A stretch of 64,000 nucleotides of DNA from Thecamonas trahens ATCC 50062. Its lineage: Eukaryota > Protista > Apusomonadida. Shown here piece by piece: positions 27,785-33,000 of the stretch. The DNA is taken from the NCBI RefSeq assembly GCF_000142905.1, contig NW_013657626.1, forward strand, positions 186,001 through 250,000. Reading direction: 5' to 3'. The notes under the pieces were generated by a model that saw nothing but the letters and a program-made list of their open reading frames with translations, had not been told where the DNA came from and did no database searches. Position 1 is the first letter of the stretch, and each line of letters opens with the position of its first letter. The translations under genes were made by a program, and so were the position numbers.

Positions 27785-28449
27785 TTAGAACAGCTCATCG
27801 CATGCCACCGGGAGGCCCGCCACAAGAAGCCCAAGCGCCTCCACCGCCGCGCTACAGTCTTGCGGATGCAGGTAGCCGCGCCGCCCATAGTACTCGGCGC
27901 ACGAGACCGTGGTGTAGCTGAACGAGAACTCAGAGCCCGACGGCTTAAAGTGAAGCCCGCGCGAGTTCCACACCATCGCCGCGCCCTTGACCCCCTCCAC
28001 CGACGCAAAGATCGACGCAGGCCCCGCCGCCGCCTGCGGATCCGGCGGCGCGTACGACGCGCTCGCCTCGGCTGCCACATAGCACTCGCCCGGCCGGCAC
28101 CCACGGACCGTCACCGAGCACTCGCTCTCACCAAACCCGACCAGCAGCCGCCGCGAGCCGCCAAAGCCAAGGGTCGAGTTGAGCTGGCACATGCTCTCCA
28201 GCGGGTCGTCGTCGTCACGCGCCCGCCGAGCGAGCACCCGCGAGCCTGAGCAAACCGGTCCACCGGCCAGCTGGCGGCCTCTGCTGTCGGCGCCACCACA
28301 GTCACCACAGCCACCACAGCCAACGCCACAGCCAACGCCACACTCGCCACCAGCCCCTCCCGCCTGCCCCTTCCCGCCTGCCTTCTCCCGTCTCCTCCAG
28401 TCGCTGTTCCCCATCTCCGCCCGACCCGCGTCGCCCGGCCCACGCTCAT
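27785..28449 (-). CDS. Small Cys-containing secreted or signal-anchored protein of unknown function; apparent -1 frameshift at 28252-28254
   Basis: Signal-like LVASVALAVALAVVAVVTVVAPTAEA in one frame joins the globular frame (CSGSRVL...CDELF*) if one T is added. Confidence 0.5.
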
Positions 28450-28563
28450 ATGTCCTCGGTTGCGCGCCAAGCCGCCCGAGACAAGTTGCCCTCCCCCCCC
28501 CCCCCCCCCCCCCCCCCCAATCAGTCTTCTTCGTAATTCCCCCCCCCCCCCCCAACCGACACA

Positions 28564-29980
28564 TCATTTATCGTCATCTCCGCTCGGCCCGCCAAAGCAC
28601 ACCCGCGGCCGTCGAGCCTTGGTGGAAAAGTAGAAGCCGTGGCCGGCAAAGACCGCGGCCTTGGCCTTGATGGCCACCACAGAGAGCCATCCGCGGCAGC
28701 CGAGCTCAAAGAAGACCGCGAGAAAGTCGTTGTGAAACGCTGCCACCGCGTCCAGGTACCGCTTGCGATGCCGCGCGTAGGCCGTCACAAACTGCGCACC
28801 CGATCGCACCAGCTGGCTGCCGGGCACCCACTTGTGCCGCGCCACCGCGCCCACCACAATCGCCTGCTGGCCGTCGGCAAAGTCGTCGGTCATGGCAAAA
28901 GCGAGCCAGAGCAGGTGAAAGAACGTCCGCGCTCCGTACATCCGCCGCACATGCCGCCGCCGCCGCGCTTCACCGAGCGCCTCAAAGTAGAGCGCCACCT
29001 GCGCCAGCGCGTACGCGTCCACCAGCTGCTCGCGAGCCACAAACCGGTACACCTCCTCTGTGTGCAGGAGTGAGAGAAAGAGGCAGTCATTCTCCGAGAA
29101 CGGATGAACCTTCCCCGCCCCCAATCGCACCCGCTTTCCGCTCCCGCCGCTGCGCCTGACCATCCGCGCCACCCCGCCGGCCTCATCGCCCATCGAGCCT
29201 TCTCCCGCCCCCGCCATCCACTCGGACGGCATCGCCAGCATCCCATCCCAGCCCCCGCCCCACACGCTCTCGACCCATGTCCGCTTCCGCCGTGGCCGCG
29301 CCCGCCCGGACCCGCTGTCGCAGCGGTTGTCGGCCGCCAGCCTCGCCATCGCCGCCGCTCCGGCTGCCGACAGCGCCACCGGCTCCAGCCACTGATCATG
29401 CCGCGAGCAACCGCACGCCACTGTCGGCATCGTCACACGCTCCCCGCTCCCTGCCGTTGCCTCTTCCAGCTGCGCCAGCTCGTGTGCCTGTCTCAGTCGC
29501 CCCCATCCCCGCCGTGCACCATCGTCAGAAAAAAGCCGCGCTATTCGCACGCCCCGTGTGATCGCTGGTGATCACAAACATGCTGCTGATCAAGCACGAC
29601 CTTTTTCTGCACCATCTCCTCCCCTCGCCCATGCGTACAATGTTGGTGCAGTAGAGAAGATCAGCACCCACCAGGCGAGCCACGGTGTCGGGCGCGTTCT
29701 CCTTGTCCGACTCGGCATCCAGGCTCAAGTCCGAGTCGTCGATCGACGACGTCGACGAGCCCGGCAGCGGCGGCGAGGCAGCAACCGATCGCGGCGGCGA
29801 TCGAGGTGGCGATGGCAGCCGTGATCGCTGCGCCAAGCACCGCGGCGAGCCCGGTGGCGGGGACGGCGCCAGGCTCTCCGACAAGCAAGTGAGGTCAAGC
29901 GGGCGAAAGACGCCGCGCGTTTGGGGAGCACGCTCAGGGGTAACCAGCAACAGTGCAGATGGAAGAGGCAGTGCCGCCAT
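28564..29980 (-). CDS. Speedy/RINGO (Spy1)-like protein, 2 exons (intron ~29488-29638)
   Basis: Exon 1 starts at ATG 29980, is SP-rich and has a KEN box. Phase-0 GTACGC...CAG intron. Exon 2 has FLSLL..EEVYRFV, DAYALAQVALYF, TFFHLLWLAFAMTDD, AVFFELGCRGWLS and GHGFY, collinear with the Speedy box. Confidence 0.6.
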
Positions 29981-30077: not shown

Positions 30078-33000
30078 CTACAGCTGGTTGCCCAGCATGG
30101 GGTTGGCGGCCGCAGGATCAGCGCCCTTGCGCAGCTGCTCATCGCGCTGGCGGGTGACAAAGCGGACCTGGTCCACAAAGGTGGGAAAGTACGAGATCTG
30201 GAGCGCGTTGGCAAAGAAGCCTGGGATGCAGGCGACGACGACAATGAGCAGCACGGTCGCCCAAAAGTTGCCGTCCGAGACAAGGCGGTCCATGACTTGG
30301 TAAAAGTCAAGGAAGGGGACAGCCGAGTATACCATGGTTGTGCCAAAGTAGGTGACGACCGAACCGATGAGGAGGATGCCGTTGACAGCGGTGAGGTAGT
30401 GTGAGTAGAGGAAGACCACGATTTGGTTGACAATGACCACCGCCGAGTACGCCACCATCGAGAGCGACGCATAGTCGACGGGGTAGCCGTCGCCCCAGTG
30501 CAAGTGGTCGACGTTGAAGACCGCGAGAGTGATGAGAAGCGTGACTGCGGCCTGATAGACGGCGTGGAAGAACCACGTTGCCATCGTCACCGCGTTCATC
30601 TTGTTTGACCGCTGCCCGCCCTTGTAGATGGCTGGGAACTCAAAGACCTTCTCCTCCGTCACGTCCTGGTCGAGCGCAAAGCCAAAGACCGGGAGCCCGG
30701 TGAAGACCACGTTGTACGTCGTGAGCGAGAACGTGTTCATCAGCGACGTGCCCGAGAAACCGGCGTAGAAGTTGTACAGAACCTGGATGAGACAGATGTA
30801 GATCGACTTGAAGAACGCATACTGCGCAATGACTGCGGTCCGGTTGTACGACCACCGCCCGTGCACAAGAATGAGCCGCCGCAGAAACTTGAACTTGGCA
30901 AACGAGTAATCAGCCGCCCGCGCCGCCTGCAGGCCTTCGCGCCCAGAGATGCCCACGCCAATGTGCGCCTCCTGGATCATCGTCACGTCGTTGCCTCCAT
31001 CGCCGATCGAGAGGCAAACCTTGTCCAGCTCCTTGACAGACGCGACCACCAGCGCCTTCTGCTGCGGCGTCACACGGCAGCACACCACCGCGTGCGACCG
31101 CATCCCAATGTCGCGGAACTGCTCCTTGTGGTGCTCCAGGCAGATGCCGAGCTGCCCGCCCTCGATAATCACCGTGATGTCGCACCCGCGCGCCTCGGCC
31201 TGCTTGCTCTGCTTCTCCAGCGTGTTGAGGCAGAGCCCAACCTGGTCCGCAGTCTCACCCTCCACACGGAGCAGCACTCCGCCCTCAGACTCGGGCGACA
31301 TCAGGTTGCACGCCGTCGCAATCTGCAGCGCCGTCGAGTACTTGTCGCCCGTCAGCATCCAGAACTTGAGCCCCGCACGCCTCAGCAGCGCGATCGTCTC
31401 CGGCACCTCTTCCTGCAGCTTGTCCTCGATGGCAGTCACGCCCAGAAGCTCCAGGTCCTGCTCCATCTCCTCGTACACCGCCGCCAACCGCTCCTGTGGT
31501 TCCATTCCAAGCACACACACACACACACACTCCCAGGTAAGTCTCACTCCTCTTGCTCGCTTGCGAGGCGCTGTGCCACGCCGAGAGGATCAGAGTAGTC
31601 AGAATAAAACCAGTAACGTCATCGAGACGAGCCCGTTTTTCGGTCCTCGCTCTAAGACGGCACTTCCTATCATAGAATTGATGGTTAAGCATCATCATCC
31701 GACTCGATCCTCTCGGCCCGCGCGCCGCGCCTCCCTCCACCCACACGCCTTCTTCCAACGTACGTCACGGTTCTCAATCGAGGTGTTCGCCTCGGTCCAG
31801 CGCTCCATCCAAGCCAGGTACGAATCCTCCTCCAGGTAGCGGTAGCCGATGACCAGAGTGCGGAGGCCGAGCTGGGCAAAGGTCTCCAGCTGGTGGTCCA
31901 GCTCGGCCAGGTCCGGATTGAGCGACATGTCGAGGCGCGAGATGACCTTGTCGTCGGCACCCTTCATGTACAGCTTGTAGCGGCCGGTCTCGTTGTCCTT
32001 GACAATGACCGACATGCGCTTGCGGTCCGACGAGAACTCGAGCACGTTGCACAGCTCGTAGCTCTCGGCCTTGCCCAGAAAGTCAACAGTGAGCATGTCG
32101 CCGTCGCGGGCGGTAAAGGTCACGCCCATGTCCTGCGCCGCAAGAACAAGTGCCTCTTCGTCCGGCGACGACGACTTGTACGTCACCTTGCCGTTGGCAT
32201 CAACCTCAGCGTTCGGGACAACTGTCTGGTTGAGGGCGAGGCAGCGGAAAAACTCGGCAGCCACCGTGGCCTTGGGGTCCGCCACCAGGGCGTGCAGATC
32301 CGGGTCTTGCGTCGCGTCCGAGCATGCTGCCGTGTGGCCAAACATCCGCCCGTCGACGGCGCACTTTTGGAACCGCATCACGTTCTCCGTAATGGTTCCG
32401 GTCTTGTCCGAAAGATGTATTCGAGCTGGCCGAGATCCTCCGAAATAGCCGTGTTCTTGGCCTCGGCCGGAGTGTTCGTCTCCTCGTCGTACATGTGGAT
32501 GTCCCAGTTGATCAGCTGCGCGTAGTAGAACTTGACCATGTCCATGGTCACCTTGAGCGAGATGGGAATCATAAACGACATCAGGAGCATGAACCGCAGT
32601 GGAATGACAATCGGATCGTACCACTCCTCCTTGGAGACCAGCAGGTACTCCATCTTCTTGCCCTTGTCCTCGCGCCACAACGCGCCGGCAATGCCAAACG
32701 CAATGATGAAGCAGACCTGGAGCGTGAAAATCGCCACAGTCGCCTTGTTGATCAGCTGGTCAAGATGCGTCCACTTGGTTGGCGGAATCCGCTTGTTCTT
32801 GCCAATCTTTGTCTCGTTGCCGGTGTAAACCACCATGCCGTACACCCACTCGGTGTTCCGCAGCATGCACCCCTGAAGCGCAGTCTGCTTGGCACTCAGC
32901 GAGAGCGACTCGGCGTTTGCGTCCGTCGTCAGCCGCAGCCGCGAGTCAAACTTGTAGATTTCCGGGTTCGGCGCCGCACACTCGCACACGCCCTTAAAGT

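What the first reader, a model, noticed from the sequence alone, without database searches (positions are those of the whole stretch)
28564..29980. Speedy/RINGO-like non-cyclin CDK activator in an apparently unicellular, non-animal genome
Seen: exon 2 (~29105-28630) has FLSLLHTEEVYRFV / VDAYALAQVALYF / TFFHLLWLAFAMTDD / AIVVGAV / AFHNDFLAVFFELGCRGWLS / GHGFY. This is collinear with the Speedy box as I recall it (FF.LFEDDLIQDFL / ADKYLLAMTFVYF / NFFIALYLANTVEED / EIFPWAL / FLKLRDQLWDRIDYRAIVS / THYIW). A phase-0 intron joins it to an exon with a KEN box (DKENA) and clustered SP sites, typical of APC/C- and CDK-controlled cell-cycle proteins. Known: Speedy/RINGO activates CDK1/2 without T-loop phosphorylation and is generally treated as animal-specific. 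Inference: cyclin-independent CDK activation predates animals. The ORF track hides this gene by splitting it into two unrelated-looking ORFs.
Basis: partly seen in the sequence, partly recalled or inferred. Interest (0 to 1): 0.8.

Follow-up and report, generated by a model that had tools for sequence, protein, structure and literature searches.

The report
Divergent Speedy/RINGO gene in an apusomonad
The protist Thecamonas trahens carries a real, single-copy gene for a very divergent Speedy/RINGO-type partner of cell-cycle kinases, which adds a lineage to a family already reported outside animals rather than overturning an animal-only origin.

Summary
The window comes from Thecamonas trahens ATCC 50062, an apusomonad. 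The gene is already in GenBank as hypothetical protein AMSG_09952.

- **Family match.** The Thecamonas protein scores below Pfam's Spy1 cut-off (18.3 bits against 25). Spy1 is nevertheless the only Pfam family hit by all four known relatives. The closest one, an environmental protein 45% identical, passes the cut-off (27.7 bits, E 3.8e-6).
- **Predicted binding.** A predicted complex with the organism's own PSTAIRE kinase passes the test: ipSAE 0.64, best control 0.00. The domain sits on the PSTAIRE helix and the activation loop. Invariant acidic residues lie where human Spy1 has D97, E135 and D136.
- **Gene model.** The intron is 151 nt (29638-29488), not about 530 nt. The stretch 29110-29487 is coding.
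- **Novelty.** The evolutionary inference is not new. A 2018 survey already reported Speedy genes in Capsaspora, Amoebidium and two Dictyostelium species.

Verdict: a new, previously unrecognised member of a known family. Interest is moderate to low. The scan has no earlier finding of this on other DNA.

The parts
29639..29980 (-). Exon 1 (114 codons). Starts at the ATG at 29980 and ends ...LLYCTNI. Ser/Pro-rich, with two SPPR sites and KEN at 29696-29704.
   Evidence: The sequence was read. GC3 is highest in this frame from about 29875 to 29650. It matches exon 1 of the GenBank model P0001. Its end, LLYCTNI, resembles LLFYTNV in P0004, but the BLASTP E-value is only 0.61.
29488..29638 (-). 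Intron of 151 nt, phase 0, GTACGC...CTGAC...CAG.
   Evidence: Both flanking frames hit stop codons if left unspliced. The acceptor lies one codon before the conserved HEL, exactly as in L003 and L005, where AG directly precedes GTG-CAC-GAG-CTG. The donor hexamer GTACGC is the same as in the intron of the organism's CDK gene.
28564..29487 (-). Exon 2 (307 codons plus the TGA at 28564-28566). Runs from AHEL... to ...GGPSGDDDK.
   Evidence: GC3 is 0.80-0.90 in frame throughout. It aligns with P0002, P0008, P0004 and the longer ORFs of L003 and L005. The tail VCFGGPSG matches VCTGGPQE in P0002 and P0008.
29398..29484 (-). Conserved N-terminal motif of unknown role: HEL, then about 18 residues, then TVACGC..H.
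   Evidence: Shared with the ORFs of L003 and L005. H2, E3, C25 and G26 are invariant in alignment A4.
29275..29292 (-). Basic patch RRKRTW, NLS-like.
   Evidence: It corresponds to ARKRTY in P0004 and KRRK in L003 and L005. The nuclear-import role is inferred only.
29110..29274 (-). Gly/Ala-rich linker specific to Thecamonas.
   Evidence: It is absent from the relatives, but GC3 is 0.88 in frame. It is treated as coding. There is no RNA evidence.
28585..29082 (-). Speedy/RINGO-box-like domain. The Pfam match covers 28825-29082. Conservation with relatives continues to 28585.
   Evidence: Pfam Spy1 scores: 18.3-18.4 bits for the window, 27.7 for P0002, 22.3 for P0004, 24.2 for the L005 ORF. 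tblastn of P0002 gives E 9e-41. A predicted complex with the CDK passes the test.
29017..29019 (-). Asp31 (numbered from Val at 29109), invariant. Placed opposite human Spy1 D97.
   Evidence: Invariant in A2. It lies in the predicted interface. The role of D97 is taken from PMC6170502. The equivalence rests on collinearity.
28882..28890 (-). Acidic loop Thr74-Asp75-Asp76. Asp76 is invariant. Placed opposite human Spy1 E134-E135-D136.
   Evidence: Alignment A2. Residues 71-78 touch the CDK's R50 and its activation loop 149-159 in the predicted complex.

Best explanation
This is a two-exon, single-copy gene of Thecamonas trahens, about 421 codons long. It encodes a highly divergent member of the Speedy/RINGO family of non-cyclin CDK activators. 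The C-terminal domain of about 165 residues is inferred to dock on the PSTAIRE helix and the activation loop of the organism's Cdc2-type kinase. An invariant acidic loop (T-D-D, Asp76) sits where human Spy1 D136 mimics the phosphate of pT160. That position would let it switch the kinase on with little or no T-loop phosphorylation. The Ser/Pro-rich N-terminal exon and the conserved HEL...TVACGC..H and RKRTW motifs are probably regulatory or targeting parts. Shown here: the gene structure, conservation in four related sequences, the profile match to Spy1, and an in silico complex that beats its controls. Inferred: actual binding, activation, phosphorylation independence, and any APC/C or CDK control of the protein itself.
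For: Spy1 is the only Pfam family hit by every member. The scores are 18.3-18.4 bits for the window, 27.7 bits (E 3.8e-6, above the 25-bit cut-off) for P0002, 26.9 for the L003 ORF, 24.2 for the L005 ORF and 22.3 for P0004. All are in the same register. The window is linked to P0002 at E 2.7e-32 and to P0004 at E 2.4e-7. The predicted complex with the organism's own PSTAIRE CDK (P0009) gives ipSAE 0.64, 0.65 and 0.64, against a best control of 0.00. Partner pLDDT is 69-70 and at least 76% of contacts agree between runs. On eukaryotes that mark was reached by 39 of 65 solved pairs and 2 of 126 unrelated pairs. The interface covers CDK residues 41-57 (PSTAIRE helix) and 149-159 (T-loop), and partner residues 31, 33, 69-81 and 122-148. 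D31, D76 and D79 are invariant. The CDK keeps R50, R125, R149 and T159. Protein-language-model neighbours are all CDK activators: cyclin N-terminal domain, p35 and Spy1. A vertical origin is plausible because Speedy genes are reported in both Holozoa and Amoebozoa, which bracket the apusomonads.
Against: The window's own protein is below Pfam's cut-off. Neither single sequences nor a profile of four reach human Spy1 in the PDB. A full HMMER scan of 1.84 billion proteins found no recognised Speedy protein. Both AlphaFold2 monomer models are unusable (pLDDT 44 and 42), so the fold was never compared with Spy1, cyclin or p25. The complex predictor may pass by memory of solved CDK-cyclin-type complexes, and it cannot tell which CDK is the partner. 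The atlas scores are below 0.9 and count as leads only. The equivalence with D97, E135 and D136 rests on collinearity and on my recollection of the human sequence, not on a tool alignment. There is no RNA or protein evidence.
Confidence: 0.68

Rival explanations
1. It is a CDK partner with a cyclin-box fold but of another lineage: a p35/p39-like CDK5 activator or a strongly diverged cyclin or Pho80-type cyclin. On this view the Spy1 profile match reflects shared fold and helix composition, not specific kinship.
For: The nearest atlas clusters by language-model features are a cyclin N-terminal family (0.82) and the CDK5 activator (0.79), ahead of or level with Spy1 at 0.79. The predicted binding mode on the PSTAIRE helix and T-loop is common to all these activators.
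Against: No member hits PF00134, PF08613 or PF03261 even at E up to 10, while all hit PF11357 in one register. The invariant Asp pair sits where the Spy1-specific D97 and D136 lie.
Confidence: 0.15
2. It is a lineage-restricted helical protein of apusomonad-like protists with no role in CDK control. The Spy1 match and the complex score would then be false positives.
For: The family has only four known members. The window's score is below threshold. No bridge to recognised Speedy proteins was found by sequence. The monomer folds have low confidence.
Against: E 3.8e-6 for P0002 against the whole Pfam library, with the same sole family for every member. The complex scores 0.64 against 0.00 for three controls, and the interface falls exactly on the regulatory elements of the kinase.
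Confidence: 0.13
3. It is not a real gene: chance ORFs in GC-rich DNA joined by a gene predictor.
For: GC-rich DNA gives long spurious ORFs in every frame here. Part of the GenBank model, its third exon, looks wrong.
Against: Exon 2 is conserved at 32-44% identity in three other organisms, with 30 invariant positions. The intron position is conserved. GC3 is frame-specific.
Confidence: 0.03

Closest known systems
Speedy/RINGO A (human SPDYA/Spy1, Xenopus RINGO; Pfam PF11357; structure 5UQ2 with CDK2)
   Same: It gives a collinear profile match over positions 5-104 of the 131-position Speedy box. Invariant Asp residues sit where D97 and D136 lie, and an acidic residue sits where E135 lies. It is predicted to dock on the PSTAIRE helix and T-loop of a Cdc2-type kinase. 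The box lies inside a longer, otherwise unstructured-looking protein.
   Different: It is very divergent: no pairwise or small-profile match to human Spy1, and the window's score is below threshold. The acidic run is short (T-D-D-F-A-D rather than E-E-D-E-E-E). The N-terminal HEL...TVACGC..H and RKRTW motifs have no counterpart that I know of. It comes from an apusomonad, not an animal.
Non-metazoan Speedy genes reported by Wang et al. 2018 (Capsaspora owczarzaki, Amoebidium parasiticum, Dictyostelium fasciculatum, D. purpureum)
   Same: These are Speedy-box proteins in unicellular members of Amorphea. Together they imply that the family predates animals.
   Different: Those genes passed the survey's search and Thecamonas did not appear in it. 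I could not fetch their sequences with the tools at hand, so no direct comparison was made.
CDK5 activator p35/p25 (PF03261) and canonical cyclins (PF00134)
   Same: They are single or double cyclin-box activators that grip the PSTAIRE helix and the T-loop. p25 also activates its kinase without T-loop phosphorylation.
   Different: No member of the family gives a profile match to these families.

Membership tests
Speedy/RINGO (Pfam PF11357 Spy1) | Match to the Spy1 profile at or above the curated 25-bit cut-off | tested here: inconclusive
   The window protein scores 18.3-18.4 bits, E 0.003, which is below the cut-off. The relative P0002 scores 27.7 bits and the longer ORF of that same gene in L003 scores 26.9, both above it. 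The L005 ORF scores 24.2 and P0004 scores 22.3. Membership follows by transitivity, since the window matches P0002 at E 2.7e-32.
Speedy/RINGO (Pfam PF11357 Spy1) | Conserved acidic residues that hold the unphosphorylated T-loop (human D97, E135, D136) | tested here: met
   D31 and D76 are invariant, and position 75 is D or E in all four members. Residues 31 and 71-78 touch the CDK's R50 and its T-loop 149-159 in the predicted complex. Caveat: the residue equivalence rests on collinearity and the Pfam register, not on a printed alignment.
Speedy/RINGO (Pfam PF11357 Spy1) | Single cyclin-box fold | tested here: inconclusive
   The AlphaFold2 models built from four-sequence alignments have pLDDT 44 and 42. 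They are all-helical but unreliable. Foldseek gave nothing meaningful.
Speedy/RINGO (Pfam PF11357 Spy1) | Binds CDK1/CDK2-type kinases | tested here: met
   This was tested in silico only. ipSAE is 0.64 against a best control of 0.00, with partner pLDDT 69-70 and at least 76% contact agreement. The pass may reflect likeness to solved complexes rather than show that this copy binds.
Speedy/RINGO (Pfam PF11357 Spy1) | Activates the kinase without T-loop phosphorylation and resists p27-type inhibition | not testable with these tools
   This needs kinase assays with a T159A kinase and a D76 mutant.
Canonical cyclins (PF00134, PF02984) and Pho80-type cyclins (PF08613) | Match to a cyclin-box profile | tested here: not met
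   No member gives a hit at E up to 10. HMMER's filters drop most matches above about E 0.1.
CDK5 activator p35/p39 (PF03261) | Match to the CDK5_activator profile | tested here: not met
   There is no Pfam hit. The only signal is a language-model neighbour at 0.79, which is a lead and no more.

The most novel reading that the evidence does not exclude
A Speedy-type activator with a phosphate-mimicking Asp was already present in the common ancestor of Obazoa and Amoebozoa. On this reading, apusomonad-like protists keep a single, strongly diverged copy with its own N-terminal Cys/His module (HEL...TVACGC..H). Cyclin-independent and CAK-independent CDK activation would then be an ancient amorphean mechanism rather than a germ-line speciality of animals.
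Probability: 0.45. Interest if true: 0.5.

Novelty: new member of a known kind. Interest (0 to 1): 0.35.

Why it matters
Recent biochemical papers still describe Speedy/RINGO as a vertebrate or animal protein. A functional apusomonad copy would add a third deep lineage, between Holozoa and Amoebozoa, to the few non-animal reports. It would support vertical descent from an early amorphean ancestor. It would also offer a minimal, single-copy system for asking what phosphorylation-independent CDK activation does in a free-living flagellate. The new four-sequence profile could recover further sub-threshold members in other protists. The gain is incremental, because the pre-animal origin itself has already been published.

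Tried and rejected
- **Word-indexed homologue search:** the search on the domain came back blank. The same search with a profile of three found only the family itself.
- **Six-frame search of the window's own genome:** PF11357 gave no candidate, and the 14 bacterial and archaeal control genomes, where no Speedy gene is expected, did not ring either. This says nothing about absence.
- **PDB sequence and profile searches:** five searches never reached Spy1.
- **JGI metagenome scan:** 521 pattern matches, none of them a relative.
- **AlphaFold2:** two jobs gave pLDDT 44 and 42. No fold comparison with 5UQ2, p25 or cyclin was therefore possible.
- **Second atlas query:** the query with P0002 gave no usable hit.
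- **Search for a further exon:** I looked downstream for an exon matching the 'EEVALGAP' tail of P0002 and P0008 and found nothing convincing.
the intron from 29638 or 29671 to about 29105 is rejected on conservation and GC3.
- **Third exon of the GenBank model:** it is judged doubtful, because it removes the conserved VCFGGPSG tail.
- **DNA for P0004:** its contigs could not be fetched, so its organism and its intron structure are unknown.
- **Joined protein:** The exons were used separately by reference, and the annotated protein P0001 was used only as returned.

Full report
**What is there.** The window is GC-rich eukaryotic DNA. The ORF frame that starts with the ATG at 29980 contains DKENA and a Ser/Pro-rich stretch. 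A full HMMER scan of 1.84 billion proteins with the domain (window:28567-29109:-) returned a 575-residue protein that is 99% identical. The cluster look-up names it hypothetical protein AMSG_09952 of Thecamonas trahens ATCC 50062 (KNC54168.1, XP_013753986.1). It is an apusomonad, a lineage that on established phylogeny branches between Amoebozoa and Opisthokonta. The gene is single-copy in the 28.7 Mb assembly.

**Is it Speedy-like?**
- Pfam gives exactly one family for the Thecamonas protein: Spy1 (PF11357) at E 0.003 and 18.3 bits. This is under the 25-bit cut-off.
- The HMMER scan and a profile search found only three other relatives, all environmental. They are P0002 (186 aa, 45% identical, also present in a TARA ocean assembly), P0008 (194 aa) and P0004 (337 aa, from a Logan read-set assembly).
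- Each of these hits Spy1 and nothing else, in the same register: P0002 at 27.7 bits (E 3.8e-6, above the cut-off), the longer ORFs at 26.9 and 24.2 bits, and P0004 at 22.3 bits.
- The relatives were chosen by similarity to the window and not by their Pfam hit. This makes it a fair statistical case for remote homology.
- No cyclin, Pho80 or p35 profile is hit.
- Language-model neighbours are all CDK activators (cyclin N-terminal domain, p35, Spy1), but the scores are under 0.9, so they are only leads.
- Human Spy1 itself was never reached by sequence or by a small profile in the PDB. The relationship is therefore distant.

**Does it look able to bind a CDK?**
- A back-translated PSTAIRE pattern found the organism's Cdc2-type kinase (L007). 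Its annotated protein is P0009, 287 aa.
- The complex test with P0009 and the domain gave ipSAE 0.64, 0.65 and 0.64, against 0.00 for all three controls. Partner pLDDT was 69-70 and at least 76% of contacts agreed between runs.
- On eukaryotic pairs that mark was reached by 39 of 65 solved pairs and 2 of 126 unrelated pairs.
- On the kinase, the confident contacts are residues 41-57 (the PSTAIRE helix) and 149-159 (the activation loop, including R149, R156, T157 and T159). On the partner they are residues 31, 33, 69-81 and 122-148.
- The kinase keeps R50, R125, R149 and T159.
- In human Spy1, D97 and E135 anchor CDK2 R157 and T158, and D136 replaces the phosphate of pT160 by binding R50 and R150 (PMC6170502; PMC13570426).
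- In the Thecamonas family, Asp31 and Asp76 are invariant, and position 75 is always Asp or Glu. By collinearity with the Speedy box these are the counterparts of D97, D136 and E135, and they lie in the predicted interface.
- Caveat on the equivalence: it rests on the Pfam register and on my memory of the human sequence. That memory is consistent with the residue numbers in the two papers.
- Caveat on the test: the predictor can pass from memory of solved CDK complexes, so it shows likeness, not binding.

**Gene model.**
- The upstream part of ORF 28564-29550 is coding. GC3 in that frame is 0.83-0.90 from about 29450 to 28700, including the stretch 29110-29280.
- The peptide HEL...TVACGC..H recurs in the ORFs of L003 and L005. 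RRKRTW corresponds to ARKRTY in P0004.
- In L003 and L005, an AG preceded by a pyrimidine-rich tract and a CTGAC lies directly before the codon preceding HEL. This is the same place as the CAG at 29490-29488 in the window. The intron position is therefore conserved.
- The donor at 29638 (GTACGC, phase 0) is the same hexamer as the donor of the CDK gene's intron. It also keeps LLYCTNI, which resembles LLFYTNV in P0004. That similarity is weak taken alone (E 0.61).
- The order of motifs is the same in P0004: LLY.TN, then CG..H, then RKRT, then the box.
- At the 3' end, VCFGGPSG matches VCTGGPQE of P0002 and P0008. This supports the TGA at 28564-28566 and argues against the third exon of AMSG_09952.
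- The best model is exon 1 at 29980-29639, an intron at 29638-29488, and exon 2 at 29487-28564, about 421 codons in total.
- No RNA evidence was available.
All searches used the exons by reference, or used P0001 as returned.

**Regulatory motifs.** KEN (29696-29704), two SPPR sites and three minimal SP sites are present in exon 1. The one relative that covers this region has EEER where Thecamonas has DKEN. Ser/Pro/Arg-rich stretches are also common in GC-rich coding DNA. Control by APC/C or by CDK phosphorylation is therefore possible but unsupported.

**What is known.**
- A survey of 258 species found 544 Speedy genes. Four of the species were non-metazoan: Capsaspora owczarzaki, Amoebidium parasiticum, Dictyostelium fasciculatum and D. 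purpureum. The authors concluded that the family is older than Metazoa (bioRxiv 10.1101/354886).
- Thecamonas is not among those species, which fits its sub-threshold score.
- No paper in the library links Speedy to apusomonads.
- Recent biochemical work still speaks of homologues 'in the most primitive vertebrates'.

**Verdict.**
- This is a real, conserved gene encoding a very divergent Speedy/RINGO-box protein.
- I put homology to the family at about 0.8.
- I put the full statement at about 0.68. That statement is that it binds and activates a Cdc2-type kinase through the PSTAIRE helix and T-loop with an Asp phosphomimic.
- Phosphorylation independence on its own I put below 0.5.
- It is a new member of a known kind, and it fills an expected phylogenetic gap.

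Noticed in passing
window 28490-28560: Two long G runs on the minus strand, about 13 and about 30 G, lie just 3' of the TGA stop of the gene. They fall in the gap between two convergent genes.
   Followed up: no
window 27785-28600 (-): The GenBank model AMSG_09952 (P0001) splices out the conserved tail VCFGGPSG. It adds a third exon of about 160 residues that has no counterpart in P0002, P0008 or P0004. This is probably an annotation error.
   Followed up: partly
window 29398-29484 (-); L003 134-230; L005 77-170: The N-terminal motif HEL...TVACGC..H begins exactly at a conserved intron acceptor. It matches no Pfam family and its role is unknown.
   Followed up: partly
window 30078-31547 (-): This is the C-terminal part of a P-type ATPase, flippase-like by its sequence motifs. 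Its stop codon lies only 98 nt upstream of the Speedy-like gene's ATG, so the two transcripts may overlap.
   Followed up: no
L006 (G000:C10:61322-61342) and L007 (G000:C14:343728-343748): The genome has one exact PSTAIRE kinase (the protein P0009, two exons, intron donor GTACGC) and one PCTAIRE-motif kinase.
   Followed up: partly
L003 1-130 and L005 1-73: The introns upstream of the homologous exon in the two environmental contigs are extremely C/T-rich. They end in TTTAATTAG. The Thecamonas intron is G-rich by contrast.
   Followed up: no
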